Shown here piece by piece: positions 194-31,251 of a stretch of DNA of 64,000 bases (its first letter is position 1; every line of letters begins with the position of its first letter). The position numbers and the translations under genes were made by a program. The notes under the pieces are model-generated. The model saw only the letters and a program-made list of their open reading frames with translations, was not told the DNA's origin and did not search any database. The stretch covers positions 62,001 through 126,000 of IMG/VR virus record IMGVR_UViG_3300032046_000001; one strand, given 5' to 3'.

Positions 194-1438
194 ATGAATA
201 ATAATGGATTGAATATGACTGGAATACAACCACCAACAAAACTTGAAATGAGCGAATTTGGAATTTCACAAAACAATGTGAGTATTGTTGAGACAGTGGA
301 AGAAATAAAGAAGAACCCGCCTAATATCGTTGTAGCAGAATGTATGAACGACGTTGCCTTTATTCAAAATCGCTATAAATTACAGAAGATGTATAAAAAA
401 ATACAATATTGTATGAGTCTTGGTGTATATACTCAATTACGATTTGATACTAAAAGAAATATGAAGATTCTACGACCCGGAAAATATAAATTTAAAAATA
501 TTTATAAACCATATAATGGACAAAATTTAAATAATAAAAAATTGTTAATTTGGAGGACAGGTGGAATCGGTGATCTTTTATTTATAAATCCAATTATACG
601 ATATATAAAAGAAATATATCCAACATGTAAGATTTCATTAGCATGTGGACCTCAATATCAACCGATGGTTGAGACATTTGAAGGCATTGATAATTTGTAT
701 GATTTACCGTTCAACGCCTCAATTCTTTTTGATAATAATTATCATGCCATATTTGAAGGTGTTATTGAACGGACAAAAGAGGCTGAAAAAACCAACGCTT
801 ATGTTTTATTTGCCAAGTCTCTTGGATTGAATATTCCAGTTGAAAAACTGGTTCCTCATCAGAAACCTAAAGAAGATAAAGTTGAGGAATGTAAGAAGAT
901 TTTAGACACTTGGAAAATATCAGATAAACCATTTATATTATTACAACCAAGAGCTAGTTCGCCAATCAGAACACCAAGAACTGATTTTTGGAAACAGATA
1001 ATTAATAAATTAATCAGTCTTGATTATAATGTTATTTTGACCGATTCACCACATCAGAAAGAAAAATTAGATAACTTTATAGCAGAACTTGAAAATAAAA
1101 ACAGAGTTTTTAATTTTTGTGGACATTCAAAATCACTTGATTATACAATTGCATTAGCATCACTTGCTAATCTTATAGTAGCGACCGATTCAGCTCTAAT
1201 TCATATTGGAGCTTCATTGGGTAAGAAAGTTTTTGGAGTGTATGGTCCATTTCCTGGTGATATTCGAATGGCAACATATCCTAATTCTCGATGGGTAGAA
1301 CCACACAATTATAAATGCTGTCCTTGTTTTCGCCACGGCCACCTGAGTTGTGAGTACTCACGAAATTCATATCCTACTTGTTATGACCAAATCGACATGA
1401 ATGAGTGTTATGAAAAAATAGAAGAATTGTTAAGTTAA
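194..1438 (+). CDS. GT9-family glycosyltransferase (ADP-heptose:LPS heptosyltransferase-like)
   Basis: RTGGIGDLL N-terminal motif; ATDSALIHIGASLG and VYGP motifs; C-terminal CxPC. Confidence 0.85.
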   Translation: MNNNGLNMTGIQPPTKLEMSEFGISQNNVSIVETVEEIKKNPPNIVVAECMNDVAFIQNRYKLQKMYKKIQYCMSLGVYTQLRFDTKRNMKILRPGKYKFKNIYKPYNGQNLNNKKLLIWRTGGIGDLLFINPIIRYIKEIYPTCKISLACGPQYQPMVETFEGIDNLYDLPFNASILFDNNYHAIFEGVIERTKEAEKTNAYVLFAKSLGLNIPVEKLVPHQKPKEDKVEECKKILDTWKISDKPFILLQPRASSPIRTPRTDFWKQIINKLISLDYNVILTDSPHQKEKLDNFIAELENKNRVFNFCGHSKSLDYTIALASLANLIVATDSALIHIGASLGKKVFGVYGPFPGDIRMATYPNSRWVEPHNYKCCPCFRHGHLSCEYSRNSYPTCYDQIDMNECYEKIEELLS

Positions 1439-1448
1439 GGAATTATGA

Positions 1449-2282
1449 ATGATTAAAATATTTATTTCAGTTCGTAATCGTTTAGAAATAACAAAAAAAT
1501 GTATAGAAGCTCTTGAACGTCACTCAGTGATACCTCATGATATTTATATTTATGATAATTCTACAAATTATCGTTTACGTGAACATTGGGAGTATTTTTA
1601 TAATTTATACAAGAATGGATTGATTGTTCAGTGTATTTTTAACACAGATATATCGACATTTAATGCTTTTTCAAAAGCTGTTTCTTGTAATCAGTTTGGT
1701 CAAACTCACATGTTAGATCCAAAATGGAATCAGTGTGATTTTCTAACTATACTGGATAATGATATAATCGTTATGCCTGGATGGGATGAAATTATTAAAA
1801 AAACTTGGAAAGAAGTTAGAAATGATAATAATTTAAAAAATAAAATAAAAATTATTGGTCAAAGTCCTGGAGGAATTAAAGGATCTAAATTTGATAAAAA
1901 AATTGCTGGATATGATATTAGAATCGGAAAATATGGAGGTAGTGGATTTTGGACCGTACAATCAGATTTTTTTAAAACAATTGGCTTTCTTGATTTGACT
2001 AAACTGGTTGGTCATAATAAAAGACACGATTCTCAATATTGGGAATTATTAGAAAAAATTAATAAGGGTGAACCTTATATACTTGGTATTGATAAAAAAC
2101 TCTGTATTCATTGTGGAAAAATATCAGGTTCTATTTGTAATACTCTTACAAGAAATAAATTAAATAAAAACAAACTTGATCTTGTCAAATTTGAAGATGC
2201 CGAGAAAAATATAGAATCAATGAATTTTAACGAATTTATGAAATTTATTGAAAATGATAAATCAATGATAAAGGACTGGTAA
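1449..2282 (+). CDS. GT2-like glycosyltransferase (GT-A fold)
   Basis: IFISVRNR, YDNST, and LDND (DxD) motifs. Confidence 0.75.
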   Translation: MIKIFISVRNRLEITKKCIEALERHSVIPHDIYIYDNSTNYRLREHWEYFYNLYKNGLIVQCIFNTDISTFNAFSKAVSCNQFGQTHMLDPKWNQCDFLTILDNDIIVMPGWDEIIKKTWKEVRNDNNLKNKIKIIGQSPGGIKGSKFDKKIAGYDIRIGKYGGSGFWTVQSDFFKTIGFLDLTKLVGHNKRHDSQYWELLEKINKGEPYILGIDKKLCIHCGKISGSICNTLTRNKLNKNKLDLVKFEDAEKNIESMNFNEFMKFIENDKSMIKDW

Positions 2283-2284
2283 TT

Positions 2285-2875
2285 ATGAAAATAGATGAAA
2301 ATACAAAAATTGAAACTTGGAGAATTATAGATGATTTTCCAGACTACCAAATTAGTAATTTTGGTAGAGTGAAATCACTAAAGTTTAGAAAAGAAAAAAT
2401 TAAAAAATTGTTGATAGATCACAAGGGATACTTATATACTAAGTTATGGACTAATGGTAAAAATAAAAATAAAAAAGTTCATATTCTAATTTATGAGTCT
2501 TTTAATAATTATAAATTAAAATCGAATGAGTGTATTCATCATATTGACTTTAATACAGAAAATAATAGTATTGATAATTTTAAATTAATGACATTATATG
2601 ACCATAAGTGTCTTCACCGTACTGGTATAAATAATCCAATTTTTGGAAAAAATCATACATATAAAGCTAAAATAAAAATGAGTCAAAATAGTAGAACTCA
2701 TAAATTAGAAGAATGGAAAGTTAAAGCGATACATCAAATTTCAAATTCTCCAATTATAAAACAATTAAAAATAACTCAAGAAGAAATTGGTAAAGTATTT
2801 GAAATTAATGAAAGAACTGTTTCTGCAATAAAAAATAAAAAAATTTGGAATCACGTTTTAGAGAATTTATCATGA
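2285..2875 (+). CDS. NUMOD4-HNH homing endonuclease with C-terminal HTH
   Basis: WRIIDDFPDYQISNFGRVKS (NUMOD4), IHHIDFNTENN (HNH), TQEEIGKVFEI (HTH). Confidence 0.85.
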   Translation: MKIDENTKIETWRIIDDFPDYQISNFGRVKSLKFRKEKIKKLLIDHKGYLYTKLWTNGKNKNKKVHILIYESFNNYKLKSNECIHHIDFNTENNSIDNFKLMTLYDHKCLHRTGINNPIFGKNHTYKAKIKMSQNSRTHKLEEWKVKAIHQISNSPIIKQLKITQEEIGKVFEINERTVSAIKNKKIWNHVLENLS

Positions 2876-3744
2876 AAGAACGAGCTATATTATTTGGACC
2901 ATTTATTGGTGAATTAGGTTGGGAAATACTTCGATTTTCACCACTGGTTCCATATCATAAAAAACATAACCCTGATGCTAAAATTGTTGTTTTGACAAGA
3001 CCTGATAGATTTGATCTTTATGGTGAATATGCTGATATTCTTGTTTCATTAAATATAGACGGAAAATATAAAGCCGATTGTTATAGAGCAATCGGTTTTC
3101 CTATGGAAGAATATAAACAACTTACAGACCGTTTGTATAATCAGTTCTCAAAAAAATTTAATATTATAACACATATATTTCCCAATATTTCTGGAAAAAA
3201 TTTCGCTAATAAAAATCAATATTCGCAAAAACAATTGAAATACAAGTGGAAACCAAGATTGGCTAATGGTGAAGCCATCAAAAATTATATATTAAATGAT
3301 AAACAATCAATAGTACTTGCTCCAAGATTTAGAGATGGTTTACGTCGTAATTGGCCACATTGGAAAGAATTATATGATCTAATCAGTAATCACGATATCT
3401 ATAAGAAGTATAACTTTATTATTTGTGGTAAACCACCAGATTACATTCCAGATGAAAAAAATAGATTTTATGATATAAATAAAATTAAATTAAATAGTGA
3501 AATATCAACAATAGGTCTTACAATCGAGGCAATCAAAAGATCAATATTGACTGTTGGTTCACAATCAGGCATTCCAAATTTATCAATGATGATGGGGATT
3601 CCTGTATTGGAATGGGGTCATCAACGTCATCTACACGAATCTACTTATAATGTTAAAAAAACAAAAATTTATTTTTTAGATGATATGAAATACAATTTAG
3701 ATCCAAAAATAATTTTCAGTAAAATGATAGAAATTTTAAAATAA
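2872..3744 (+). CDS. GT-B-fold glycosyltransferase (GT9-like)
   Basis: GPFIGELGW and VGSQSGIPNLSMMMGIP motifs; ATG at 2872 overlaps the upstream TGA; paralog of 13430. Confidence 0.6.
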   Translation: MKERAILFGPFIGELGWEILRFSPLVPYHKKHNPDAKIVVLTRPDRFDLYGEYADILVSLNIDGKYKADCYRAIGFPMEEYKQLTDRLYNQFSKKFNIITHIFPNISGKNFANKNQYSQKQLKYKWKPRLANGEAIKNYILNDKQSIVLAPRFRDGLRRNWPHWKELYDLISNHDIYKKYNFIICGKPPDYIPDEKNRFYDINKIKLNSEISTIGLTIEAIKRSILTVGSQSGIPNLSMMMGIPVLEWGHQRHLHESTYNVKKTKIYFLDDMKYNLDPKIIFSKMIEILK

Positions 3745-4583
3745 TGAATAATCATTACTATATTTATATCTATTTAGATCCTCGTAAATCTGGAAAATAT
3801 TGCTATAGTGATATTTGTTTTTTATTTGAACCTTTATATATTGGTAAAGGAAAAGATAAACGATATAAAAGACTTGATAATAGAAATAATTTATTTAAAA
3901 ATAAAATAAATAGAATTAAAAAATGTGGATATGAATTAATTGTTTTTAAATTACACGAAAATTTAAATGAAGAACAATCATTCGAATTAGAGAAAAAATT
4001 AATAAAAGAAATTGGTAGAATTGACTTAAACACTGGTTTACTCGTCAATATGACCGATGGTGGAGAAGGAAGTAGTGGATGTGTTATTTCAGAAGAAACA
4101 AAAAATAATATTAAAAAAAGAATGATTGGTAAAAACAATCCAATGTTTGGAAAATGTGTATACGGTATGTTGGGAAAAAAACATAAAGAGGAATCAAGGA
4201 GATTAATATCTGAAAAAGCAAGCGGTAGAAAATTATCAAGAGAAATTAAGAAAAAATTCTCTAATTCAAAAATTGGTAAGTTCAATCCAATGTACAAAAA
4301 TATTATTTATTTTGATATAAATACTAAATTACCAGTAAAACAGATTGGAGAAAAAAATCCATCATCAAAGTTATCTGAAAAAGATGTTATAAATATATGG
4401 TTTGATATTTTAAATAAAAAATTAACTCAAACTGAAATAGCTAAAAAATTTAATATTGAAAAAACAACAGTGTATAATATAAAAACTGGAAGAAAATGGA
4501 AACATATATACTATAATTTAAAAATAATATTTTTGAATAAATTAATATATATTTTAAAAATAAAACATAGGGAGAGACTTTAA
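3744..4583 (+). CDS. GIY-YIG-like homing endonuclease with NUMOD3 and HTH
   Basis: YIYIYLDPR...YIGKG..R, NMTDGGEG, NPMFGK, TQTEIAKKF. Confidence 0.8.
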   Translation: MNNHYYIYIYLDPRKSGKYCYSDICFLFEPLYIGKGKDKRYKRLDNRNNLFKNKINRIKKCGYELIVFKLHENLNEEQSFELEKKLIKEIGRIDLNTGLLVNMTDGGEGSSGCVISEETKNNIKKRMIGKNNPMFGKCVYGMLGKKHKEESRRLISEKASGRKLSREIKKKFSNSKIGKFNPMYKNIIYFDINTKLPVKQIGEKNPSSKLSEKDVINIWFDILNKKLTQTEIAKKFNIEKTTVYNIKTGRKWKHIYYNLKIIFLNKLIYILKIKHRERL

Positions 4584-4625: not shown

Positions 4626-5876
4626 TTAATTATCAAATTTCCATGAAGAATTTGCCAAAAGTTGTTCTTTTTCAGTTTTAACATACTCTAATGCAGCCTT
4701 ACGAGATTCATCAGATGTTAGACCAGAAAATATAACGGTACGGAATCGATACGATCGAGTATACGAACCCCACAACGGCCATAATTTTTCACCCAAAAGA
4801 GATGGTTTTGTGTCTGAAGATCTATTCTGAAGAATTGCTTGCTTCATACAAGGAATCTGAATTGTTCCTTCACTGGTTGTTGGAATGTGGAGAGAAAGTT
4901 CTGTTATCCACTTATCATGTTGATATAGAGTAGTCATGTGATATGTTCCAATTTGGATATTAGCCTGTGGGTTAACACCATGATAATACTTATTCATATC
5001 AGATCGATAGAGAATGAAATCAAATTGCTCCTTTATATGATTTTCATTATTGAATGTATCGATGATCACTTCAATACATTCTTTTTTTCTGTCTTCGATC
5101 CCCGGACGAGTTGGGGTTGTGAGTTGATGTTTTAAATATCTTTTATCATCAGTTGATAGATAAATTTCAATCACGCCTTCCCACTCAGTACCATTAAAAC
5201 AAGTAGTTGTTATAATACATCCTATATGGATATTACCAAGAATAATCGGTGTATGACACGTTGTCTTTGACATATAGGAATTAATTTCCCGACTGATATT
5301 GTTGACTAATTGAAGACATTCAGCCAACGCAGTTTCACGATTCTCTGACTTTGGAATCCATTTAAAGAAGGTTCTAGTAGGACTTGCTTCAGTGAATCGA
5401 AATCCCCACATATCAGAAAATTCTTCACCGAAAGTAATATTACTATCACTGAGTCCTCTAAGAAGAACGTCCGGTAAAACAAGATATAGTCTCAGGAAAT
5501 CTCTGGGTTGATTATAATCTTCCACAACAAAATACCAACCTTGGTATGATGCCATAGGAAGAGTTCCATGAACAAGAGGATTGCGATCTATAATGGCTTC
5601 TTGAACAGATGGAGGAGTTTGATTATCGGAGATTCTCCAAAGTCGGTCGATTGCCATAGGATCATATAAATTACCACCATCACACCTAAAAACTTTTTGT
5701 AGAATTCTTCCATCTTTTATATAAACAGCATCTATACCCATATTAAATTTGGTGGCATCAAAAGATATAAATTCACCAGAATAACATTGACCGTTGATAA
5801 GGGCAATAAATCTTTTTCCGAGAGGAAGTTCAACATTACGACAATCAAGATCGATTTCTTCAAATTTTGGAAACAT
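4626..5876 (-). CDS. Hypothetical protein
   Basis: Long ORF; SD AAAGGAG upstream of ATG at 5876. Confidence 0.7.
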   Translation of the reverse strand: MFPKFEEIDLDCRNVELPLGKRFIALINGQCYSGEFISFDATKFNMGIDAVYIKDGRILQKVFRCDGGNLYDPMAIDRLWRISDNQTPPSVQEAIIDRNPLVHGTLPMASYQGWYFVVEDYNQPRDFLRLYLVLPDVLLRGLSDSNITFGEEFSDMWGFRFTEASPTRTFFKWIPKSENRETALAECLQLVNNISREINSYMSKTTCHTPIILGNIHIGCIITTTCFNGTEWEGVIEIYLSTDDKRYLKHQLTTPTRPGIEDRKKECIEVIIDTFNNENHIKEQFDFILYRSDMNKYYHGVNPQANIQIGTYHMTTLYQHDKWITELSLHIPTTSEGTIQIPCMKQAILQNRSSDTKPSLLGEKLWPLWGSYTRSYRFRTVIFSGLTSDESRKAALEYVKTEKEQLLANSSWKFDN

Positions 5877-5895
5877 TGTTAGTTCTCCTTTCAAG

Positions 5896-6423
5896 TTAAA
5901 TTCGTTTAAATATTTCCCAGTTTTTCTTAAATTCTTCCTGAACCGATGGAATAATTATTGGAGGTAATTTACCTTCAAGTGACCTTCCATACAAAAGATC
6001 ATCTCTAATTTCAGTTGCTGATACCTTTGGTGTTGTCCCATCAAACCGATTCATAAGTTGTATTTTTCGACCAGATTTTATGAAGAACTCAACATCCTCT
6101 TCACACCCGCCAAAGAAAACGAGATCTCGATGTGGTGCAGTGGATGAATTACCAAATACTGTTAATAAAATATCATCAAGTGCCGATAACCAAAATTCAT
6201 CAGAATTATAATCAGGTATTCCAACAATTGGAAATGGTTCTGGATAAATCATTCTGATAAATTTTTTTCGTTGTTCGTATGAAAAAAAGTGTCTCATTGA
6301 CATTGAATTTGTTGATGAACCTATAACAACAAGACACTTCGCGCACATCTCAAACATCATATTGATGACGGTGGTGTGACCTCTATGTATTGGGTTAAAT
6401 CTACCAATGAAGACTCCTCGCAT
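5896..6423 (-). CDS. NMN adenylyltransferase / cytidylyltransferase-family protein (NadM-like)
   Basis: GRFNPIHRGH (HxGH) and VSATEIR motifs. Confidence 0.8.
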   Translation of the reverse strand: MRGVFIGRFNPIHRGHTTVINMMFEMCAKCLVVIGSSTNSMSMRHFFSYEQRKKFIRMIYPEPFPIVGIPDYNSDEFWLSALDDILLTVFGNSSTAPHRDLVFFGGCEEDVEFFIKSGRKIQLMNRFDGTTPKVSATEIRDDLLYGRSLEGKLPPIIIPSVQEEFKKNWEIFKRI

Positions 6424-6764
6424 GGTTTTTCCTCCTCGTCTTTATAAAATATTTTTTCTTCTTCACTAATTCGATTTAAAACATGATTTAAAGTTACATC
6501 CTGAAAATTATAATTGATGATTCTCTTCTTTTCGATACTGTTAGCACCGGATGTCAATGTTCCCCAATTATCATCCAACTCTGAACCGAAAAATTTACCA
6601 TTTCTTTTATAGTCCACTCTGAGTTCACCAACACGATTAACCGGGAGGAAAATGACCAAACTAATGCTATTAATATTTTCAGTTATCTCATATATTCCCC
6701 TTCCGCTAAAAAAAGTTTCTAATGGAAAACCCTTACCAGTTACAGTCATAATCATTCTTAACAT
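6357..6764 (-). CDS. Hypothetical protein
   Basis: ORF with SD AGGAG; first gene after the 14-nt motif. Confidence 0.55.
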   Translation of the reverse strand: MLRMIMTVTGKGFPLETFFSGRGIYEITENINSISLVIFLPVNRVGELRVDYKRNGKFFGSELDDNWGTLTSGANSIEKKRIINYNFQDVTLNHVLNRISEEEKIFYKDEEEKPCEESSLVDLTQYIEVTPPSSI

Positions 6765-6806
6765 GACATCACTCTCCTATTTAAAAAATAGATTATTAAT
6801 CTCATA

Positions 6807-6820
6807 TATTAATATATATA
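6807..6820 (-). promoter_or_regulatory. Putative promoter motif TATATATATTAATA (copy 1)
   Basis: Exact 14-mer found four times, always heading a minus-strand gene island. Confidence 0.6.
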
Positions 6821-6885
6821 GAAGATTGTTTATTTGTGGGAACAAATTTTAAATTATAATAACAAATAAATGAGGAAATAATTGA

Positions 6886-7395
6886 ATGAGTACTTCGAGT
6901 AGTAAATTAAGAGAGATGATCAATAATGCTGATCAACAAGCAGAGGATATTGATAACAGTGTTACTCAAATCGATACTCAACTCACTGAACTACAATCTC
7001 AACATGATGCAATACGTGAAGGACTATTGGATGTTATTACTGGTGATATGACCAGTTATTTAGAGATTACAAAGATAGTTGAAGTTGGTGGTGATTCTGT
7101 TATATATGAAACGGACTTCGGCCAATCAACAGTCGCAACATTTCATATACTTGATTCGACGGGCGTCCCCATATATTCGTATCAATCTGTAGGATGGGAT
7201 GATGACACTAGTATTCAAACATGGGTAATACAATTCGATTTCGGATGGAATTATATTCACCAACCAATCGGTATTGATGGGACGTTTGGTATTCAATCAA
7301 GAATTGATCAATTAGAAAATGCAAAAGGACTTCTAACAGCAAATAAAAACAAAATAGAAAATTCAAAAACAATATTTGAAGATTATGCTATTTAA
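6886..7395 (+). CDS. Hypothetical protein (acidic, coiled-coil ends; possibly virion)
   Basis: 169-aa ORF with SD GAGG. Confidence 0.6.
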   Translation: MSTSSSKLREMINNADQQAEDIDNSVTQIDTQLTELQSQHDAIREGLLDVITGDMTSYLEITKIVEVGGDSVIYETDFGQSTVATFHILDSTGVPIYSYQSVGWDDDTSIQTWVIQFDFGWNYIHQPIGIDGTFGIQSRIDQLENAKGLLTANKNKIENSKTIFEDYAI

Positions 7396-7406
7396 AAAAT
7401 TTTTAT

Positions 7407-7500
7407 AAGAGAGATAGAGATTGCAACTCGAAAAGAAGTAATCCGAAACTTCCTTCTCTCTTTAATATAATTCGGAAATAACAATCGGAGGTTATAAAAA
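7407..7500 (+). ncRNA. Structured leader RNA, copy 1 (three-way junction plus pseudoknot) upstream of an HNH gene
   Basis: P1 7407-14/7455-62, P2 7417-19/7427-29, P3 7435-39/7448-52; loop TCCGAA complementary to TTCGGA (7471) and to the SD region TCGGAG (7485). Confidence 0.75.
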
Positions 7501-8088
7501 ATGAAAATATTTGAAAATTTAGACTTACGAGATTTAGATAAAGAAGTTTGGAAAACTATAGAAGAATATCCAGATTATCAAATTAGTAACTTGGGTAGAG
7601 TTAAAAGTTTTAAAAATAATTGTGGTATAGATGTTAAAATATTAAAACAAATAAAAGATAAAAATGGATATCTAATTATTGATTTATATAAGAACGGAAA
7701 ATCAAAACTTAAAAAAGTTCATCGTCTTGTTTATGAAACTCATACAGGAAAATTAGAAGAAGATTATGATGCTCATCATGTAAATGAAGATAAAGAAAAT
7801 AATTTTGTTGGGAATTTAGAAACTAAAGAACATGGAAAACACTCAAAAGATCATCATAAAGATAAAATAATTTCAAAAGAAATAAGAATAAAAATGAGTA
7901 ATACAAGAAAGGAAAGATATAAAAAAGAAAATCATCCAAATTATAAAATAACAAATCAAAAAATTATTGATATCGTCGTTGATATAGAAAAAGGAGATTT
8001 AACACAAGTAGAAATAGCTAAAAAACATGGAGTTGGTCAAACAACAGTATCGTGTATAAAAACAGGAAAATTAAAATTTTATAATTAG
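7501..8088 (+). CDS. NUMOD4-HNH homing endonuclease
   Basis: WKTIEEYPDYQISNLGRVKS; VHRLV...AHHVNEDKENN; C-terminal HTH. Confidence 0.85.
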   Translation: MKIFENLDLRDLDKEVWKTIEEYPDYQISNLGRVKSFKNNCGIDVKILKQIKDKNGYLIIDLYKNGKSKLKKVHRLVYETHTGKLEEDYDAHHVNEDKENNFVGNLETKEHGKHSKDHHKDKIISKEIRIKMSNTRKERYKKENHPNYKITNQKIIDIVVDIEKGDLTQVEIAKKHGVGQTTVSCIKTGKLKFYN

Positions 8089-8097
8089 GAGAAAAAA

Positions 8098-8301
8098 ATG
8101 ATTGAGAATGCATGGTTAAAATTAGCAGAGTCAAGAATTGAATATTTAATTCGAAGATGTAAAGAAGAATCCGTCAAAGGAACTTTTGAAGGTTCTATAG
8201 ATCTTAACGAAGTTTCATATTTATTAAATGGAAGTAAAGTTGAAATTCAAAAACTTATGATAAAGAATCATCAACTAAAAGAAGAATTAGAAAAAAAATA
8301 A
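8098..8301 (+). CDS. Hypothetical protein
   Basis: SD AGGAG; 67 aa. Confidence 0.6.
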   Translation: MIENAWLKLAESRIEYLIRRCKEESVKGTFEGSIDLNEVSYLLNGSKVEIQKLMIKNHQLKEELEKK

Positions 8302-8308
8302 GACGATT

Positions 8309-8355
8309 CGAGCATGTTCAGATTTCCTCACTTAAGAAGAATCTGAACATGCTCG
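8309..8355. terminator. Bidirectional terminator
   Basis: 16-bp inverted repeat CGAGCATGTTCAGATT/AATCTGAACATGCTCG between convergent genes. Confidence 0.75.
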
Positions 8356-8361
8356 TTTCAG

Positions 8362-9252: not shown

Positions 9253-9279
9253 TTTTTTTTCCTCCAAGAAAGGTAACAT

Positions 9280-23713: not shown

Positions 23714-24358
23714 ATGAGTAAAAAAAATATTGAAGTTAAATTTTATATTCCAATTTCAGAAGGAAGATATTTTAATATAATATCAAACTTATCTAAAACA
23801 CTTTTAGGAAATGGAAATACTTCTGTAATTCAAGCAAGAACGGACAAACTAGTTTTTAAAGTAAAATATAATGAAAAATTATTTAGATTTGATTTTGGAC
23901 AAAAATATCTAGTTAATATTAATGAGCAAAAGATAGCATCAGAAACCATAAATATTCCTAAAATATTATTTGTTGATAATATTAAAAAATATAAAATAAG
24001 TGAATGGATTGATGGTGTTGATATTAATAAAGTATGGAATCTACCAGAAGTTTTTATTCAATCTGGAGAATTAATGGGAAAATTAAATTTAATTAAAAAT
24101 ACAAATTCTGGAATGTATTTATCTAACTGTGAATTTTCATCATCTAATGCTATTTGGAGTAATGATAAAAAAGTTTATTTAATTGACTTGGGAAAATTAC
24201 GTTGGAGTTCTTGTACTGATATAACTATCGTTCAAGTATTATTAAAAAGAATTAGAAATAAAGAAAAAATAGATCTGTTTTTAGAAGGATACTCAAAATT
24301 TAAATCGACAGAAAAAATTATAAAAATATGTAATCAAAAAAATTGGAGTTGGAAATAA
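23714..24358 (+). CDS. Kinase-like protein (APH / LPS-kinase fold)
   Basis: VFKV, ISEWIDG, N..VYLIDLG. Confidence 0.55.
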   Translation: MSKKNIEVKFYIPISEGRYFNIISNLSKTLLGNGNTSVIQARTDKLVFKVKYNEKLFRFDFGQKYLVNINEQKIASETINIPKILFVDNIKKYKISEWIDGVDINKVWNLPEVFIQSGELMGKLNLIKNTNSGMYLSNCEFSSSNAIWSNDKKVYLIDLGKLRWSSCTDITIVQVLLKRIRNKEKIDLFLEGYSKFKSTEKIIKICNQKNWSWK

Positions 24359-24383: not shown

Positions 24384-25034
24384 ATGATAGATAAATCTAA
24401 AATAACGAAAACAATAAAACGTTTAGGTCCGTGGTATCAAAACGTAAATATATATGGTATTCAGACAGTTGGAAAAAAAGAACCTTATAGTAGTGTTGTT
24501 TCAGTACAAACTGTTTTCAATAATATTAAATCTTTTATTCCAACATCATTAAATGGATTAAGAGTTCTTGATCTTGGTTGTAATGCTGGTTTTCATTCTC
24601 TTAATATGGCATTATTAGGTGCAGAAGTTATTGGTATAGAATCTAATGAAACTTTTTATAATCAAGCTCTATTTTTAAAACAATATTATGATGAATTATA
24701 TAAACAAAATTTAAATGTGACTTATATCAAAAAAAATATATCTGATATTAATTTTAAAGAACTAGGTAAATTTGACTATGTACTAGCCTTAGCTATAATA
24801 TATCACATTGGTAAAACTCAATACGGTAAATGTACTGAGAAAGCTTTTGAAGAACAATTTCGTATATTAAAAATGATTGACTCGAATTATTTTATTGTTG
24901 GAACTAGAAATGCCTCTACAAATAACATCGATCATTATAATACAGTTTTTAACAAACTTAATTTTAGTTATATGAAAGTTATTAACGGTGGAAAAAGAAA
25001 TTGGATTTTATATGGAGGAAATAATATTAAATAA
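24384..25034 (+). CDS. SAM methyltransferase (CmoB/DUF1698-like)
   Basis: PWYQ, VLDLGCNAG, FDYVL..AIIYH. Confidence 0.75.
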   Translation: MIDKSKITKTIKRLGPWYQNVNIYGIQTVGKKEPYSSVVSVQTVFNNIKSFIPTSLNGLRVLDLGCNAGFHSLNMALLGAEVIGIESNETFYNQALFLKQYYDELYKQNLNVTYIKKNISDINFKELGKFDYVLALAIIYHIGKTQYGKCTEKAFEEQFRILKMIDSNYFIVGTRNASTNNIDHYNTVFNKLNFSYMKVINGGKRNWILYGGNNIK

Positions 25035-25558: not shown

Positions 25559-26200
25559 ATGAAAATATTAACTATATGTCAAGGTGGTAATAGTCGAAGT
25601 GTGGGAATGGCGTTTCTTCTTAAATATAAATATAATATAGACGCGATTGCTTGTAGTTGGGAAAAGAATAGCTCTGAAACTTTGAAGATGTTATTTGAAT
25701 GGGCTGATAACATTCTCATTATGGAAAGTAATTTTGAAAAATATATTCCAAATGAGTATAAACATAAGATTAGAGTGACCGATGTTGGAGAAGATGTTTG
25801 GTTCTCTATTAGAAAAGACTTGGTTGATTTATGTGATCAATTATTAGAACCTTTTAAAATGGGGGTAAATATGATTAATGAGTCCGAATACAGAAATGAA
25901 ATAAAAAATATAGTATTTGAAATTAAAGAATCTCCTATTAATGGATTGGGAGTTTTTTCATTAAAAAATTTTAAAAAAGATGATTATATTTCTATACACG
26001 GAATTATGTTGGAAAATGATTTTGAAATCACCAAATTTGGTAGATATTTAAATCATTCATACACACCAAATGCTGTGACAAAAGTTAATCTTGGTGTTTA
26101 TAAAACCTATGCTATAAAACCAATTAAATCAGGAGATGAAATAACTCTTGATTATAGAAAAAGAAAAGAACTGGAGCAACCACAAAAAGGATGGAAATAA
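25559..26200 (+). CDS. LMW-PTP-like phosphatase fused to a SET-domain protein
   Basis: CQGGNSRS (Cx5RS); GLGVF, RYLNHS..PN and GDEITLDY SET motifs; internal SD plus ATG at 25871. Confidence 0.75.
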   Translation: MKILTICQGGNSRSVGMAFLLKYKYNIDAIACSWEKNSSETLKMLFEWADNILIMESNFEKYIPNEYKHKIRVTDVGEDVWFSIRKDLVDLCDQLLEPFKMGVNMINESEYRNEIKNIVFEIKESPINGLGVFSLKNFKKDDYISIHGIMLENDFEITKFGRYLNHSYTPNAVTKVNLGVYKTYAIKPIKSGDEITLDYRKRKELEQPQKGWK

Positions 26201-27822: not shown

Positions 27823-28223
27823 GTACTACATTAAAATTATCAAATAAAGAAATTATAGATTTAAATTTGATGTGTAAAATGATGTCATTTACAATAGGAA
27901 GTTGTTACTCAACATCGAATAACTGTGTGCCATCTCTTTATACATCATTTAATTCAAATGATATAAATAATATAAAAGATTTTAATAATAAATTAATGAA
28001 TAAAATAATAGAAGAAGAATCTGATAATTTAGAAGTTCCAAAAATAGAAAAAACTTTTATAGAAGAATTAAGATATTTGATCAATCAATACAGTAAAGAA
28101 AACGGTTCAGATACTCCAGATTTTATATTATCTGAATATTTAAATGAATGTCTTGAATTATTCAATAAAATAATAAATAAAAGAGAAGATTGGTATGGAC
28201 AGAAATTAAATGAAAATTTATGA
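27819..28223 (+). CDS. Hypothetical protein
   Basis: C-terminal SKENGSDTPDFIL-type phage ORFan domain. Confidence 0.6.
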   Translation: MSTTLKLSNKEIIDLNLMCKMMSFTIGSCYSTSNNCVPSLYTSFNSNDINNIKDFNNKLMNKIIEEESDNLEVPKIEKTFIEELRYLINQYSKENGSDTPDFILSEYLNECLELFNKIINKREDWYGQKLNENL

Positions 28224-28839
28224 AAATTTAGATATTAATGATTTAGATGGAGAAGTTTGGAAAACAATAGAAGGATATCCTGATTACCAAGTTAGTAATC
28301 TTGGTAGAGTTAAAAGAATTATTGTAGATAGATGGAATCATAAATTAAAAATATTAAAACAAAATAAAAATAATAATAAATATTTTAAAGTTAGTTTATC
28401 TAAAAATGGAATATCAAAAACTAAATTGGTTCATCGTCTTGTTTTTGAAACCTTTAAAGAAAGATTAAAAGATGGGCATGATGCTCATCACATAAATGAA
28501 GATAAAGAATATAATTTTATTAATAATTTAGAATCTAAACCACACGGAAAACATATAGAAGACCATAGAAAAGGAAAGAAACTTTCAGAAGAAACTAAAA
28601 ATAGAATTAGTGAAAGTAGTGAAGGAAAAATATTATCTGAAGAAACAAAAAAGAAAATGAGTGAAAGTAAAAAAGGAGAAAATCATCCAAATTTTAAAAT
28701 AACAAATCCAAAAATCATTGGTATTCAAATAGATATAGAAAATAGAAATTTGACACAAAAAGAAATTGGTAGAAAAAACAGAATTTCCCAGTCAATGATA
28801 TCTAAAATAAAAACAGGAAAAATTAGGTATCATATATGA
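28210..28839 (+). CDS. NUMOD4-HNH homing endonuclease with NUMOD3 and HTH
   Basis: NUMOD4, AHHINEDKEYN, SEETKKKMSE. Confidence 0.85.
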   Translation: MKIYENLDINDLDGEVWKTIEGYPDYQVSNLGRVKRIIVDRWNHKLKILKQNKNNNKYFKVSLSKNGISKTKLVHRLVFETFKERLKDGHDAHHINEDKEYNFINNLESKPHGKHIEDHRKGKKLSEETKNRISESSEGKILSEETKKKMSESKKGENHPNFKITNPKIIGIQIDIENRNLTQKEIGRKNRISQSMISKIKTGKIRYHI

Positions 28840-29933
28840 AGATTGCAACAGTAATTGGAAATCGTCCACAAATAATAAAAACTTGTTTATTTTCAAATAA
28901 AGTAAGACAATTAGGAATTAAAGAAATATTGATAAATACAAATCAGCACTATGATTTTAATTTATCAGATATATTTTTCAAAGAATTAAATGTGCCACTT
29001 CCCGATTATAATTTAAATATTGGTGGTACTTCTCCATGTCAGCAAATAGGAAATGGAATAATTAAACTTGAAAAAATACTACTAAAAGAAATGCCAAGTA
29101 TACTAGTTGTATTTGGTGACACAAATTCTACATTAATCGGAGCATTAACAGCCAAAAAATTAAGTATTCCTATTGCACATATCGAGTCTGGTATGCGTTG
29201 CTTCGACAAAAATATGCCAGAAGAAACAAACAGAGTACTGACAGATCACATGTCTGATTACTTATTTTGTCCGTCTCAAGTTTCATATCAAAATTTGGCA
29301 AAAGAACATCTTATTAAACCAGATAAGACAATTATTTCTGGTGATGTTATGATCGATGTTCTCATAGAAGTTATGAAAAAGATTGATGAAGATGAAATAT
29401 TTAATAAAATTAAAAATAAATATAAAGTAGAAAAAGATAGTTATATTTTAACAACTGTTCATAGGGCAGAAAATACTGATAATATAGACAGACTAAAAAA
29501 TATAATTGAAGCTCTAATTGAAATATCAAATGATATTCCTGTTGTATTTCCAATTCACCCCAGAACAGAGAAAATTTTGAAGAATCTAAAATTAGATCTT
29601 CCTAAAAATTTAATTATTATTGATCCAGTTGGTTATAAAGACATGTTAATATTGGAGAAGAATTCCAAGTTAATTATTACAGACTCAGGCGGGATACAGA
29701 GGGAGGTGTATTTCTTTAGGAAGCCTAGTGTAATCACTAGAAATTCTACAGAGTGGGTAGAACTTATACTGTGTGGATATTCAAAATTAGTTGATACGAT
29801 TAACAAAAATGAAATTACAAGTTCTATTAAAGAATTATTAAATGATAATTATTTAAATAATAAAAATTGGGATGCTTTTTATGGAATAGGGAATAGTACA
29901 AATATTATAATAAAATATTTAATTGGAGATTAA
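28836..29933 (+). CDS. wecB: Non-hydrolysing UDP-GlcNAc 2-epimerase (WecB/WbpI family)
   Basis: GNRPQIIK, QHYD, GDTNST, HIESGMR, PEETNR, TDSGGIQRE. Confidence 0.9.
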   Translation: MKIATVIGNRPQIIKTCLFSNKVRQLGIKEILINTNQHYDFNLSDIFFKELNVPLPDYNLNIGGTSPCQQIGNGIIKLEKILLKEMPSILVVFGDTNSTLIGALTAKKLSIPIAHIESGMRCFDKNMPEETNRVLTDHMSDYLFCPSQVSYQNLAKEHLIKPDKTIISGDVMIDVLIEVMKKIDEDEIFNKIKNKYKVEKDSYILTTVHRAENTDNIDRLKNIIEALIEISNDIPVVFPIHPRTEKILKNLKLDLPKNLIIIDPVGYKDMLILEKNSKLIITDSGGIQREVYFFRKPSVITRNSTEWVELILCGYSKLVDTINKNEITSSIKELLNDNYLNNKNWDAFYGIGNSTNIIIKYLIGD

Positions 29934-30565
29934 TATTGTGGAAGTATATAAAAATTTAAATTTAAAAAATCTGGAAAATGAAATCTGGAAAGTTATAATA
30001 GACTTTCCAGATTATCAAGTTAGTAATTTAGGCAGAATTAAAAGTTTTAAACAAAATAAAATAAATGGAAAAATACGAAAACAAAAGAAAAATAAAGATG
30101 GATATTTAGAAATTGATTTATGTAAAAATGGAATATCAAAAACTAAATTAGTTCATCGTTTAGTTTATGAAAACTTCAAAGAAAAGTTAGAAGAAAAGTA
30201 TGATGCTCATCATATAAATGGGGATAGAGAATATAATTTTATTAATAATTTAGAACCTGTATTACACAGTGAACATTCAATTGGTAAAATAGTTTCAGAA
30301 GAAACCAAAAGAAAAATAAGTAAAAATCATGCTGATTTTAAAGGAAGATCTGGTATTAAAAGACCAGGAGAAGACAACCAAAATTCAAAGTTAAAAGATG
30401 GAGAAGTCTGGTTAATTAAAAAAATATTAAATTCGGATTATTATAAATCTGGAAAAATAACTCAGAAATTTATAGGAAATATGTTTGGTGTTGTTCAAAC
30501 TGTAATTTCAAAAATAAAACTTGGAAAATCATGGTCGCATATAAAATATTTAATCGGAGAATAAT
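29910..30565 (+). mobile_element. HNH cassette bounded by 25-bp direct repeats (23/25 identical)
   Basis: ATAAAATATTTAAT(T/C)GGAGA(T/A)TAAT at 29910-29934 and 30541-30565. Confidence 0.6.
29938..30564 (+). CDS. NUMOD4-HNH homing endonuclease
   Basis: NUMOD4, HNH and HTH; GTG at 29938 matches paralog starts and has SD GGAG. Confidence 0.8.
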   Translation: MEVYKNLNLKNLENEIWKVIIDFPDYQVSNLGRIKSFKQNKINGKIRKQKKNKDGYLEIDLCKNGISKTKLVHRLVYENFKEKLEEKYDAHHINGDREYNFINNLEPVLHSEHSIGKIVSEETKRKISKNHADFKGRSGIKRPGEDNQNSKLKDGEVWLIKKILNSDYYKSGKITQKFIGNMFGVVQTVISKIKLGKSWSHIKYLIGE

Positions 30566-30567
30566 GA

Positions 30568-31251
30568 ATGATTGACATTACCATGACATCTACAATTAGA
30601 CCTGAGATTTTAAAAAGAACATTAGAATCATTTTGTCAAAATATGTTCATTGATAAAAATAAATATCGTTTAATTATTAATATAGATCCAATTGGTGAAG
30701 ACATAAAACCAAAATTCATTTTAAAAACAGCACAAGAATATTTTGATAATATAGTTTATAGATATCCATCAGAACCAGGATTCACTAAAGCTATTATCTG
30801 GACATGGAGTCAAGTTAAATCTGATTATGTTTTTAATCTACAAGACGATTTTAAATTATTACGACCAATTAATATTGATTATATGATTGAAGTATTAGAA
30901 AATAATCCAAAATTGGCCAGTCTTCGTTTAAATAAGAATGAAACACCAATTAATAATGGAGATACTGAATTTACAATATGTCCGAGAATATCTCTAAATC
31001 CTATTTTATTCAAATATGAATTTATTAAAGGAGTAACTCCATTAATGACACCAGACGAAAACCCAGAGAAACAATTAAGACATTCTTTAAAAAGTGAAAG
31101 AGGAAGATTCATAAGAAAATGGGAACATGGAATTTATATAAAAGAATCAAGAGATCGAATTGTTGAAGATATTGGAAGAAAATGGATTAATAAAAGTATA
31201 TATCATAAAAAAATAGGATTTACAAAATGGGAAATAAAAGATGAAAACTAA
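30568..31251 (+). CDS. GT2-like glycosyltransferase, paralog of 16113
   Basis: IDIT, YRLIINIDPIG, NLQDDF, NPEKQLR. Confidence 0.7.
   Translation: MIDITMTSTIRPEILKRTLESFCQNMFIDKNKYRLIINIDPIGEDIKPKFILKTAQEYFDNIVYRYPSEPGFTKAIIWTWSQVKSDYVFNLQDDFKLLRPINIDYMIEVLENNPKLASLRLNKNETPINNGDTEFTICPRISLNPILFKYEFIKGVTPLMTPDENPEKQLRHSLKSERGRFIRKWEHGIYIKESRDRIVEDIGRKWINKSIYHKKIGFTKWEIKDEN

What the first reader, a model, noticed from the sequence alone, without database searches (positions are those of the whole stretch)
194..31251. Unusually large virus-encoded glycan assembly and decoration cluster
Seen: GT9, three GT2-like, GT4, two CgeB-like, a GT-D-like and two GT9-like paralogs, four methyltransferases, a DegT aminotransferase, a kinase, an Asn-synthetase-like protein and a UDP-GlcNAc 2-epimerase, with a WbpB-like dehydrogenase (44506) and another GT (47794) further on. 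No flippase, polymerase or ligase (Wzx/Wzy/WaaL) and no TM segments are evident. Established: dehydrogenase, aminotransferase and epimerase are steps of the Wbp/Wlb di-N-acetyl-mannuronate route. Inference: cytoplasmic synthesis of a complex methylated glycan on virion proteins rather than host O-antigen conversion.
Basis: partly seen in the sequence, partly recalled or inferred. Interest (0 to 1): 0.62.

Follow-up and report, generated by a model that had tools for sequence, protein, structure and literature searches.

The report
Jumbo phage glycan-building gene cluster
An uncultured 312-kb sediment phage carries about 18 soluble sugar-transferase genes plus sugar-tailoring enzymes but no membrane export machinery, so it most likely coats its own particle proteins with a complex sugar, as giant viruses do; nobody has tested this.

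Summary
The window is part of a complete 312,420-bp jumbo phage with two multisubunit RNA polymerases, capsid, portal and sheath genes.

Between 194 and 31251 I confirm:
- GT9, GT4, GT-D-like and two CgeB-like transferases
- four methyltransferases
- a WecB-type UDP-GlcNAc 2-epimerase, a small Bud32-like kinase and an Asn-synthase-like protein
- two Pfam-less paralogs that fold as GT9-like GT-B, and a third compact GT-B

Corrections:
- The three "GT2-like" genes score below Pfam's threshold.
- The "DegT" is a 202-aa short form, and the genome has no full-length DegT.
- Seven homing endonucleases and an unrelated 8-kb reverse-strand block interrupt the cluster. That block holds an NMN adenylyltransferase and small membrane proteins.

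The complete genome has no priming transferase, Wzx, Wzy/WaaL or any polytopic exporter. It also lacks the ThyA, TET and C5-methylase enzymes that create the attachment point for DNA glycosylation.

A six- to seven-transferase core is syntenic in at least six related phage contigs. The short DegT family sits next to the capsid gene in marine T4-like phages. A second transferase cluster adjoins collagen-like fibre genes.

Virion glycosylation is the best reading (about 0.5) and is unproven. I rate it a new variant of a known kind.

The parts
194..1438 (+). GT9 (heptosyltransferase-family) glycosyltransferase; first gene of the conserved core
   Evidence: Pfam PF01075 at 62.8 bits. 47-52% identical orthologs sit in the same position in L027, L035, L036, L037 and L038.
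1449..2282 (+). 277-aa core protein, possibly a GT-A/GT2-like transferase
   Evidence: Only a sub-threshold GT2 hit (E 0.022). 48-57% identical syntenic orthologs occur in all relatives.
2285..2875 (+). HNH-NUMOD4 homing endonuclease inserted in the core
   Evidence: Pfam NUMOD4 and HNH_3. Absent at this site in L027, L035, L037 and L038.
2845..3744 (+). Compact GT-B transferase, Pfam-less family 'A1', paralog a
   Evidence: 31% identical to 13430-14272. That paralog's model matches GT9 structures at Z 12.5-13.6.
3744..4583 (+). GIY-YIG-NUMOD3 homing endonuclease
   Evidence: Pfam NUMOD3 and LEM-3 GIY-YIG. One of 11 paralogs in the genome.
4626..12564 (-). Inserted block that is not glycan-related. 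It holds a 422-aa unknown, an NMN adenylyltransferase (5896-6423), eight small ORFs with TM-like segments (9037-12564) and a plus-strand HNH (7501-8088).
   Evidence: NCBIfam NMNAT hits and the hydropathy scan. The block is shared with the close relative L028 but absent from L027, L035, L037 and L038, where the core is uninterrupted.
12735..13433 (+). GIY-YIG-NUMOD3 homing endonuclease
   Evidence: Pfam. Relative L028 has an HNH gene at the same site.
13430..14272 (+). Compact GT-B transferase, family A1, paralog b
   Evidence: 52 homologs, none with a Pfam domain. AlphaFold pLDDT 89.9. Matches GT9 3tov at Z 13.6, WaaF at 12.8, WaaC at 12.6 and TibC at 10.6.
14263..15276 (+). GT4 glycosyltransferase (core)
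   Evidence: PF00534 at 48.7 bits. 45-82% identical syntenic orthologs.
15273..16106 (+). GT-D-fold-like glycosyltransferase (core)
   Evidence: PF22882 at 45.4 bits and NCBIfam GT-D_rel. Orthologs in L027 and L038.
16113..16811 (+). GT2-like protein (core); 55% identical paralog of 30568-31251
   Evidence: Paralogy from blastp. Sub-threshold GT2 hit. Orthologs in L037 and L038.
16812..17735 (+). CgeB-like glycosyltransferase
   Evidence: PF13524 at 74.3 bits.
17732..18328 (+). HNH-NUMOD4 homing endonuclease lying between the two CgeB-like paralogs
   Evidence: Pfam.
18338..19261 (+). CgeB-like glycosyltransferase; 47% identical paralog of 16812-17735
   Evidence: PF13524 at 69.5 bits and blastp.
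19263..20012 (+). Compact GT-B transferase of a Pfam-less family
   Evidence: pLDDT 93.9. Nearest solved structures are SenB, SdgB, Gtf3 and GtfC. Nearest viral folds are Tupanvirus, Catovirus and CroV multi-transferase proteins, TMq 0.72-0.87. Some homologs are fused to GT2/GT4 domains. 65% identical ortholog in L023.
19994..20626 (+). SAM methyltransferase (Methyltransf_24)
   Evidence: PF13578 at 30.7 bits. 67% identical ortholog in L023.
20616..21227 (+). SAM methyltransferase
   Evidence: PF08241 at 21.6 bits, marginally over cut-off. 62% identical ortholog in L023.
21230..22003 (+). SAM methyltransferase (Methyltransf_31/25/11)
   Evidence: 82.8 bits.
22007..23083 (+). Asn-synthase-domain-like ATP-dependent amidoligase with no glutaminase domain
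   Evidence: Atlas feature score 0.96 and structure TM 0.77 to Asn_synthase clusters. Degenerate PP-loop HSSGTDTR. 52% identical ortholog beside the short DegT in L023.
23093..23701 (+). Short DegT: a 202-aa DegT/DnrJ/EryC1-like PLP protein
   Evidence: PF01041 at 86.8 bits. It aligns to perosamine synthetase residues 40-107 and 181-256 only. It keeps Asp91 and Lys115. The family has 4421 proteins of about 200 aa, and the best 120 are 68-94% identical.
23714..24358 (+). Small Bud32/RIO-like kinase
   Evidence: NCBIfam NF011460, E 1e-8, below cut-off.
24384..25034 (+). SAM methyltransferase
   Evidence: PF08003, PF08241 and PF13649.
25559..26200 (+). SET-domain protein (lysine methyltransferase family); its link to the glycan genes is unknown
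   Evidence: PF00856 at 39.3 bits.
28210..28839 (+). HNH-NUMOD4 homing endonuclease upstream of the epimerase
   Evidence: Pfam.
28836..29933 (+). Non-hydrolysing UDP-GlcNAc 2-epimerase (WecB type)
   Evidence: PF02350, E 3e-94. TIGR00236 at 297.7 bits, over the 210 cut-off.
29923..30564 (+). HNH-NUMOD4 homing endonuclease downstream of the epimerase
   Evidence: Pfam.
30568..31251 (+). GT2-like protein
   Evidence: PF00535, E 7.7e-4 at 19.9 bits, below cut-off. Paralog of 16113-16811.
44506..45492 (+). GFO/IDH/MocA oxidoreductase; best match is UDP-GlcNAc 3-dehydrogenase
   Evidence: PF01408 at 82.1 bits. NF040723 at 175 bits, below the 450 cut-off.
47147..47797 (+). HNH-NUMOD4 homing endonuclease
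   Evidence: Pfam.
47782..48807 (+). GT4-like glycosyltransferase
   Evidence: PF00534 at 32.4 bits. 45% identical ortholog in L023.

Best explanation
This is a lipid-carrier-independent, fully cytoplasmic glycosylation system of a jumbo phage that decorates the phage's own structural proteins.

Shown:
- The genome encodes about 18 soluble transferase-like proteins. Twelve lie in the window and five or six beside the fibre genes.
- It also encodes nucleotide-sugar enzymes: a WecB-type 2-epimerase, a UDP-GlcNAc 3-dehydrogenase-like oxidoreductase, a hexapeptide N-acetyltransferase, an NDP-sugar 6-dehydrogenase, an SDR epimerase/dehydratase and a short DegT-like PLP protein.
- Tailoring enzymes are present: four SAM methyltransferases, an Asn-synthase-like amidoligase and a small kinase.
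- It has no initiating phosphoglycosyl transferase, flippase, polymerase, ligase or other polytopic exporter.

Inferred:
- Host UDP-GlcNAc is converted into ManNAc-type, 3-amino/acetamido and uronate/uronamide sugars.
- The conserved core (GT9, the 277-aa protein, two A1 GT-B proteins, GT4, GT-D, the 232-aa GT2-like protein) builds an inner oligosaccharide directly on Ser/Thr of virion proteins.
- The variable genes (CgeB-like pair, 249-aa GT-B, methyltransferases, amidoligase, short DegT, kinase) add lineage-specific outer decoration.
- Candidate acceptors are the collagen-like (Gly-Tyr-Ser)n fibres, the 2382-aa sheath paralog (26% Ser+Thr) and a Ser/Thr-rich stretch of the major head protein.
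For: 1. The genome is viral and complete.
2. None of the enzymes has a TM segment. No Bac_transf, WecA/MraY, Wzy_C/WaaL or Wzx family member was found. The only polytopic protein is a phosphate transporter.
3. The transferase core is syntenic at 40-57% identity in L027, L035, L036, L037 and L038, and at 63-98% in L028 and L034. The tailoring genes downstream differ, for example sulfotransferases in L027. This points to a conserved acceptor with a variable outer glycan.
4. Family A1 was found in only 4 of about 185,000 species genomes. At least two of those four contigs carry this phage's synteny.
5. The short DegT, a CgeB-like transferase and an A1-like protein lie directly after portal-protease-scaffold-Gp23 in a marine T4-like contig. 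Sixteen similar places were not shown.
6. The 249-aa GT-B's nearest viral folds are Mimiviridae multi-transferase proteins. Its nearest solved ones include SdgB, Gtf3 and GtfC, which are cytoplasmic O-glycosylases of serine-rich proteins. GT-D is the fold of the Fap1-pathway enzyme (my own knowledge).
7. A second cluster lies immediately after two collagen-like fibre genes: a GT2-GT2-methyltransferase fusion of 763 aa, a GT4, a GT2 and a GT9.
8. The cultured Flavobacterium phage immuto carries a 12-gene cluster with a short DegT. Its DNA shows only dA, dC, dT and fdPreQ1 by LC-MS, with no sugar-bearing nucleoside (PMC10516641).
Against: - There are no virion proteomics, glycan staining or expression data, and no RNA run holds the sequence.
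- Gene adjacency is only circumstantial.
- GT9 enzymes classically act on LPS core at the inner face of the membrane without TM segments. Soluble phage transferases could therefore extend host lipid-linked intermediates, with the host's own flippases exporting them.
- Large cyanophage clusters of similar make-up have been interpreted as host-surface remodelling (PMC7824862).
- Three 'GT2-like' assignments are sub-threshold.
- The activities of the short DegT and the kinase are unknown.
- The host is unknown.
Confidence: 0.5

Rival explanations
1. Host envelope remodelling. The soluble phage transferases and sugar enzymes extend or alter host LPS core, O-unit, capsule or teichoic-acid intermediates on the cytoplasmic face. 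The host's own flippases, polymerases and ligases export them. This would block superinfection or stop progeny sticking to debris.
For: - GT9 family members are classically LPS-core heptosyltransferases; the NCBIfam best hits are heptosyltransferase II/III.
- The WecB, 3-dehydrogenase, acetyltransferase and 6-dehydrogenase families are typical of O-antigen loci.
- This is the published interpretation for jumbo cyanophage clusters (PMC7824862).
- Lack of phage export genes does not exclude use of host ones.
Against: - The transferase core is vertically conserved across divergent relatives rather than sporadic.
- The key families are essentially phage-only or shared with Mimiviridae.
- The cassette is placed next to gp23 or fibre genes.
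- The genome has no priming enzyme of its own.
- I looked for no lysogeny genes, and a transient change in a cell about to lyse would give less benefit.
Confidence: 0.25
2. DNA hypermodification. The transferases attach mono- or oligosaccharides to modified bases of the phage DNA to evade restriction, as in T4, RB69 and the 5mYOX/ThyS-linked clusters.
For: - Phage transferases with partner epimerases are known to build di- and tri-saccharides on 5hmC or 5hoC (bioRxiv 10.1101/2023.12.21.572611; PMC13326640).
- The kinase, PLP protein and amidoligase are enzyme classes also used in thymidine hypermodification (my own knowledge).
Against: - The complete genome has no thymidylate-synthase homolog, no TET/JBP dioxygenase and no C5 cytosine methylase. 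The known hydroxyl attachment points therefore cannot be made.
- About 18 transferases far exceeds any known DNA pathway.
- Phage immuto, which carries a related cassette, shows no glycosylated nucleoside (PMC10516641).
Confidence: 0.07
3. Glycosylation of host proteins, or synthesis of a soluble glycoconjugate. The enzymes would modify host surface appendages (pilin, flagellin, adhesins) or make a secreted or intracellular glycoside that serves takeover or defence evasion.
For: - The GT-D, Gtf3/SdgB-like and GT9/TibC-like folds include enzymes that glycosylate bacterial adhesins in the cytoplasm.
- The neighbour of the short DegT in phage immuto is annotated 'pilin glycosylation protein', which is a hexapeptide transferase.
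Against: - Nothing specifically points to a host target.
- Core conservation across phages with presumably different hosts favours a phage-encoded acceptor.
- The placement beside capsid and fibre genes fits virion targets better.
Confidence: 0.1

Closest known systems
Autonomous virion glycosylation of giant viruses (chlorovirus PBCV-1 capsid glycans; Mimiviridae fibril glycans; PMC9614988, PMC7019647)
   Same: - Soluble virus-encoded transferases plus nucleotide-sugar enzymes and methyltransferases, with no use of a membrane export route.
- Multi-domain transferase-methyltransferase proteins: this genome has a GT2-GT2-MT fusion at genome 154781-157072. PBCV-1 A064R has a comparable layout (my own knowledge).
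- The 249-aa GT-B here has its nearest viral folds in Tupanvirus, Catovirus and CroV.
- CgeB-like domains are present in both.
   Different: - The host is prokaryotic and the virus is a tailed phage.
- The acceptor is unknown.
- The families GT9, A1, GT-D and short DegT are not those characterised in giant viruses.
- Nothing has been shown biochemically.
Mycobacteriophage virion glycosylation (Freeman et al. 2023, as cited in PMC12619734)
   Same: Phage-encoded transferases modify capsid and tail-tube subunits in the cytoplasm. The proposed role is a glycan shield.
   Different: Those phages carry one to a few transferases next to the structural genes. This phage has about 18 transferases plus sugar-nucleotide and tailoring enzymes, in a jumbo phage with its own RNA polymerases.
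LPS/capsule-type clusters of jumbo T4-like cyanophages (for example the P-SSM2 15-gene cluster; PMC7824862)
   Same: Large phage clusters of transferases, SDR epimerase/dehydratases, aminotransferases and methyltransferases. They also lack their own export genes.
   Different: - Those clusters are described as sporadic and polymorphic even between close relatives, and are interpreted as host-surface modification.
- This cluster has a lineage-conserved transferase core, a different phage group and different families.
Pseudomonas/Bordetella Wbp/Wlb pathway to UDP-ManNAc3NAcA
   Same: All five enzyme families have some representative in the genome: 6-dehydrogenase, 3-dehydrogenase, aminotransferase fold, hexapeptide acetyltransferase and 2-epimerase. 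An Asn-synthase-like protein recalls the amidotransferases of such loci (my own knowledge).
   Different: - The genes are scattered over 270 kb.
- The aminotransferase is a 202-aa short form.
- The 6-dehydrogenase is truncated and closest to UDP-glucose dehydrogenases.
- Apart from the epimerase's wecB model, which does not tell WbpI from WecB, no equivalog cut-off was reached.
Serine-rich-repeat adhesin glycosylation of Gram-positive bacteria (GtfA/B, Gtf3/GtfC, the GT-D enzyme dGT1, SdgA/B)
   Same: Stepwise cytoplasmic O-glycosylation of Ser-rich proteins by soluble GT-B and GT-D enzymes. The fold matches of 19263-20012 include SdgB, Gtf3 and GtfC, and 15273-16106 is GT-D-like.
   Different: The fold similarity is generic (TM 0.5-0.6). 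There is no SecA2/Y2 export partner, and the acceptors here would be phage proteins.

Membership tests
Virus (tailed jumbo phage) rather than cellular contig | Complete genome with phage hallmark genes | tested here: met
   - 312,420 bp, classed as having direct terminal repeats and 100% complete, with terminal overlap.
- Two sets of RNA polymerase beta/beta' subunits, sheath and baseplate.
- Portal, major head protein and DNA polymerase.
Wzx/Wzy- or ABC-dependent surface polysaccharide locus | Initiating phosphoglycosyl transferase (Bac_transf or WecA/MraY family) | tested here: not met
   No match in the complete genome at E<=0.1; the control genomes do match.
Wzx/Wzy- or ABC-dependent surface polysaccharide locus | Flippase, polymerase/ligase or another polytopic exporter | tested here: not met
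   No Polysacc_synt or Wzy_C match. The hydropathy census finds one protein with 6 TM-like segments, and it is an SLC34-type phosphate transporter fused to PhoU. ABC transporter families were not scanned separately.
Wbp/Wlb UDP-ManNAc3NAcA pathway | WbpE-type full-length PLP aminotransferase | tested here: not met
   The only DegT match in the genome is the 205-aa frame at genome 85108-85629. It lacks two internal segments and the whole C-terminal domain.
Wbp/Wlb UDP-ManNAc3NAcA pathway | WbpA (UDP-GlcNAc 6-dehydrogenase), WbpB (3-dehydrogenase), WbpD (acetyltransferase) and WbpI (2-epimerase) orthologs | tested here: inconclusive
   Family-level matches only.
- NDP-sugar dehydrogenase: 187.4 bits against a 189.8 cut-off, truncated, closest to TuaD/AglM.
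- 3-dehydrogenase: 175 bits against 450.
- NeuD/PglB-type acetyltransferase: 91.9 bits against 160.8.
- The epimerase passes the wecB model, which does not separate WbpI from WecB.
DNA sugar-hypermodification clusters | An enzyme that makes the hydroxyl attachment point (ThyA homolog, 5mYOX/TET, or C5-methylase plus oxygenase) | tested here: not met
   No PF00303, PF12851 or PF00145 match in the complete genome.
CAZy GT9 | Sequence membership (Pfam Glyco_transf_9) | tested here: met
   Met for 194-1438 (62.8 bits) and for genome 161511-162593 (41.6 bits). Not met by sequence for 2845-3744 and 13430-14272, which resemble GT9 only by fold (Z 12.5-13.6, 7-11% identity).
CAZy GT2 (for the three 'GT2-like' genes) | Pfam Glycos_transf_2 over cut-off (23.3 bits) | tested here: not met
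   Scores are 15.1, 12.7 and 19.9 bits. True GT2 domains over cut-off lie outside the window at genome 154919-156256 and 159872-160261.
Virus-encoded virion glycosylation system | Glycan demonstrated on virion proteins and dependent on viral transferases | not testable with these tools
   The phage is uncultured and there are no proteomic or RNA data. Only context supports this.

The most novel reading that the evidence does not exclude
A clade of jumbo phages with their own RNA polymerases builds a complex aminated, amidated, methylated and possibly phosphorylated oligosaccharide directly on head, sheath or fibre proteins. It would do so with about 18 soluble transferases and no lipid carrier. 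That would make it the bacterial-virus counterpart of giant-virus glycosylation, sharing some transferase families with Mimiviridae. Its most conserved component would be a previously undescribed 200-aa minimal PLP enzyme, the short DegT. This enzyme is 68-94% identical across thousands of aquatic phage contigs and sits in capsid-adjacent cassettes of marine T4-like phages.
Probability: 0.4. Interest if true: 0.78.

Novelty: new variant of a known kind. Interest (0 to 1): 0.62.

Why it matters
- **Scale.** If the glycan is on the virion, tailed phages would join giant viruses in making elaborate glycans with their own cytoplasmic machinery. The scale here (about 4% of genes) is far beyond the one to few transferases known from mycobacteriophages.
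- **Ecology.** Such a coat would affect adsorption, particle stability in sediment, recognition by grazers or immune systems, and host-range prediction.
- **New enzyme families.** The work defines three transferase families without a Pfam model. It also defines a very widespread, very conserved 200-aa DegT-like protein whose chemistry is unknown and easy to test.
- **A tractable model.** The cassette also occurs in a cultured phage (Flavobacterium phage immuto), so the question can be tested at the bench.

Tried and rejected
**Searches that found nothing**
- Megablast of 50000-64000 against GenBank phages: no match.
- PHROGs gave nothing for seven cluster unknowns.
- Scanning viral contigs with 22007-23083 found no relative.
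- A profile of family A1 against PDB sequences gave only chance-level hits.
- The atlas search for 4626-5894 gave no usable hit. It stays unknown and I do not count it as a glycan gene.
- tblastn of the conserved upstream 408-aa and 517-aa proteins against phages: no match.
- Literature searches for glycosylated collagen-like phage fibres and for the short DegT cassette found nothing relevant.

**Assignments I rejected**
- The cytidylyltransferase-like gene 5896-6423 could have been a sugar-nucleotide enzyme, but its NCBIfam hits are all to adenylyltransferases, the best being NMN adenylyltransferase.
- The 6-TM protein could have been a flippase, but it is a phosphate transporter.
- The 'moraphage' lineage (PMC12619734) is not this phage's lineage, because moraphages lack RNA polymerases.

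- The atlas fold library was unavailable.
- The promoter/terminator scan failed on a size slip and I did not repeat it.

Full report
**What the window is.** The window is bases 62001-126000 of a 312,420-bp virus record. The record is classed as complete with direct terminal repeats. Its first bases recur 253 bp from the end. GC content is 28.6%.

The genome encodes:
- two sets of split multisubunit RNA polymerase beta/beta' subunits, a baseplate wedge protein and two sheath paralogs of 652 and 2382 aa;
- a portal, a major head protein and a DNA polymerase, the last at window 59842-63075.

It is therefore a jumbo contractile-tailed phage of the group that carries its own RNA polymerases. It is only distantly related to any GenBank phage (22-33% identity on RNA polymerase). 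Near-identical DNA occurs in sediment metagenomes.

**Checking the inventory.** Pfam, NCBIfam and PHROGs scans confirm over cut-off:
- GT9 (194-1438), GT4 (14263-15276) and GT-D-like (15273-16106);
- two CgeB-like paralogs (16812-17735 and 18338-19261, 47% identical);
- four SAM methyltransferases (19994-20626, 20616-21227, 21230-22003, 24384-25034);
- a DegT match (23093-23701);
- a WecB-type UDP-GlcNAc 2-epimerase (28836-29933, over the equivalog cut-off);
- a GFO/IDH/MocA oxidoreductase whose best match is UDP-GlcNAc 3-dehydrogenase (44506-45492);
- a GT4-like protein (47782-48807).

Other items needed other evidence:
- The kinase is 23714-24358 (Bud32-like, sub-threshold).
- The 'Asn-synthetase-like' protein is 22007-23083. 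Sequence libraries miss it. The atlas places it with Asn_synthase clusters by features (0.96) and by structure (TM up to 0.77). It has no glutaminase domain and a degenerate PP-loop.
- The 'two GT9-like paralogs' are 2845-3744 and 13430-14272 (31% identical). Their family has 52 homologs with no Pfam domain. It folds confidently (pLDDT 90) as a compact GT-B. The best solved matches are GT9 enzymes: 3tov at Z 13.6 (rmsd 4.5 Å, 241 residues aligned), WaaF, WaaC and the protein heptosyltransferase TibC.
It resembles SenB, SdgB, Gtf3 and GtfC. Some of its homologs are fused to GT2 and GT4 domains.
- The three 'GT2-like' genes stay sub-threshold.

**What else lies in the interval.**
- Seven homing-endonuclease genes lie inside 194-31251. 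The genome has 35 in all: 24 HNH-NUMOD4 and 11 GIY-YIG.
- An 8-kb reverse-strand block (4626-12564) holds an NMN adenylyltransferase, an unknown 422-aa protein and eight small ORFs with TM-like segments.
- Relatives L027, L035, L037 and L038 have the transferase core uninterrupted. The close relative L028 shares the block. The endonucleases and the block are therefore insertions into an older cluster.

**Export machinery and DNA attachment points.**
- The complete genome has no Bac_transf, WecA/MraY-family, Wzy_C/WaaL or Wzx match, while the control genomes do match.
- The only protein with more than four TM-like segments is a Na/phosphate cotransporter-PhoU fusion.
- There is also no thymidylate-synthase homolog, TET/JBP dioxygenase or C5 cytosine methylase. 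These make the hydroxyl groups that all described DNA-sugar pathways use (bioRxiv 10.1101/2023.12.21.572611; PMC13326640).

**Sugar-nucleotide enzymes elsewhere in the genome.**
- a truncated NDP-sugar 6-dehydrogenase (genome 32309-33172)
- a NeuD/PglB-type hexapeptide acetyltransferase (genome 168687-169256)
- an SDR epimerase/dehydratase (genome 300186-301169)
- no full-length DegT anywhere

The Wbp/Wlb idea is thus consistent at family level. It fails at the aminotransferase step as classically defined.

**Comparative evidence.**
- The order GT9, 277-aa protein, A1a, (A1b), GT4, GT-D, 232-aa GT2-like protein recurs in at least six independent contigs at 40-57% identity. It is preceded by the same four upstream genes.
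- Two of these contigs are filed in MAGs labelled Hyphomicrobiales and Thermoplasmatales. They carry the phage synteny, so they look mis-binned.
- The tailoring region downstream differs. L027 has sulfotransferases and SDR enzymes. L023 has full-length DegT, GNAT and hexapeptide transferases, and shares with this phage the module of 249-aa GT-B, two methyltransferases, short DegT and Asn-synthase-like protein.

**The short DegT.**
- It is about 200 aa and keeps the PLP Asp and Lys.
- The family has 4421 members in the searched length range, and the best 120 are 68-94% identical.
- In a TARA T4-like contig it lies directly after portal, protease, scaffold and Gp23. Its neighbours there are a TOD1/MUCI70-like transferase, an A1-like protein, a CgeB-like transferase, a sulfotransferase and a GT8-like protein. 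Sixteen similar places were not shown.
- The cultured Flavobacterium phage immuto has a 12-gene version. Its DNA contains no glycosylated nucleoside (PMC10516641).

**Link to giant viruses.** The nearest viral folds of the 249-aa GT-B are Mimiviridae multi-transferase proteins, with TMq 0.72-0.87.

**Second cluster and candidate acceptors.** Outside the window, immediately after two collagen-like (Gly-Tyr-Ser)n fibre genes (genome 147942-151285), lie:
- a 552-aa protein with a weak GT2 hit;
- a GT2-GT2-methyltransferase fusion of 763 aa;
- a GT4, a GT2 and a second GT9.

The 2382-aa sheath paralog is 26% Ser+Thr against a proteome median of 10.6%. The major head protein has a Ser/Thr-rich stretch.

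**Interpretation.**
- The best-supported reading (about 0.5) is cytoplasmic, carrier-independent glycosylation of the phage's own structural proteins. A conserved inner core would carry lineage-specific outer decoration.
- The main rival (about 0.25) is remodelling of host lipid-linked glycans that the host exports itself. This has been proposed for cyanophage clusters (PMC7824862).
- DNA glycosylation (about 0.07) lacks its attachment-point enzymes.
- Modification of host proteins or synthesis of a soluble glycoconjugate remains possible (about 0.1).
- All functional statements beyond family or fold assignment are inference.

**Limits.**
Those letters were sent to no search afterwards.
The three GT2-like proteins and the 422-aa protein therefore remain unresolved.

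Noticed in passing
whole genome; in the window 2285-2875, 3744-4583, 7501-8088, 12735-13433, 17732-18328, 28210-28839, 29923-30564, 47147-47797 and 63190-63816: The genome has 35 free-standing homing-endonuclease genes: 24 HNH-NUMOD4 and 11 GIY-YIG-NUMOD3. They share C-terminal DNA-binding modules and make up about 7% of the genome. Two of them flank the epimerase gene. The site before 13430 holds a GIY-YIG gene here but an HNH gene in relative L028, which suggests turnover at an insertion hot spot.
   Followed up: partly
23093-23701, and loci L029, L032, L033: The 202-aa DegT-like protein belongs to a very large family that is 68-94% identical among its best hits. It is found in aquatic phage contigs and is often next to a CgeB-like transferase. 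In marine T4-like contigs it lies right after the major capsid gene. I found no description of it in the searched literature.
   Followed up: partly
outside the window: genome 147942-162593 (window-equivalent 85942-100593): Two collagen-like (Gly-Tyr-Ser)n fibre genes are followed by a second transferase cluster. It includes a 763-aa GT2-GT2-methyltransferase fusion, a GT4, a GT2 and a second GT9.
   Followed up: partly
9037-12564 (reverse strand): Eight small ORFs of 60-180 aa each have one or two TM-like segments. They are conserved at 51-73% identity in relative L028. Their function is unknown.
   Followed up: no
35925-36860, 38167-39444, 43410-44246, 45503-46810: A block of nucleotide-metabolism genes lies between the glycan genes: a dihydroorotate dehydrogenase-like gene, purD (GARS), pyrF (OMP decarboxylase) and a PIN-PhoH fusion.
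   Followed up: partly
5896-6423 (reverse strand) and genome 59832-60386: An NMN adenylyltransferase and a separate NUDIX protein suggest a phage NAD salvage module. The NUDIX gene always precedes the GT9 gene in relatives.
   Followed up: no
outside the window: genome 165934-167559 (reverse strand): A Na/phosphate cotransporter (SLC34-like) is fused to a PhoU domain. It is a phosphate-uptake auxiliary gene and the only polytopic membrane protein in the genome.
   Followed up: partly
outside the window: genome 192499-199647: A 2382-aa sheath paralog carries a canonical sheath domain at its C-terminus and nine repeats of an unknown PHROG family. It is 26% Ser+Thr. A normal-sized 652-aa sheath gene lies just upstream.
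   Followed up: no
loci L037 (CAYYIP010000005.1) and L038 (DAOVGR010000028.1): Contigs filed in a 'Hyphomicrobiales' MAG and a 'Thermoplasmatales archaeon' MAG carry this phage lineage's gene order and have low GC (23-28%). They are probably mis-binned phage contigs.
   Followed up: partly
outside the window: genome 32309-33172 (reverse strand): The NDP-sugar 6-dehydrogenase is only 287 aa and lacks the C-terminal UDP-binding domain. The 187-aa ORF downstream has no Pfam match. It could be a split, decayed or minimal form.
   Followed up: no
25559-26200: A SET-domain (lysine methyltransferase family) gene lies inside the glycan cluster. Its target is unknown.
   Followed up: no
I worked beside them and sent none of these letters to any search tool afterwards.
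   Followed up: no
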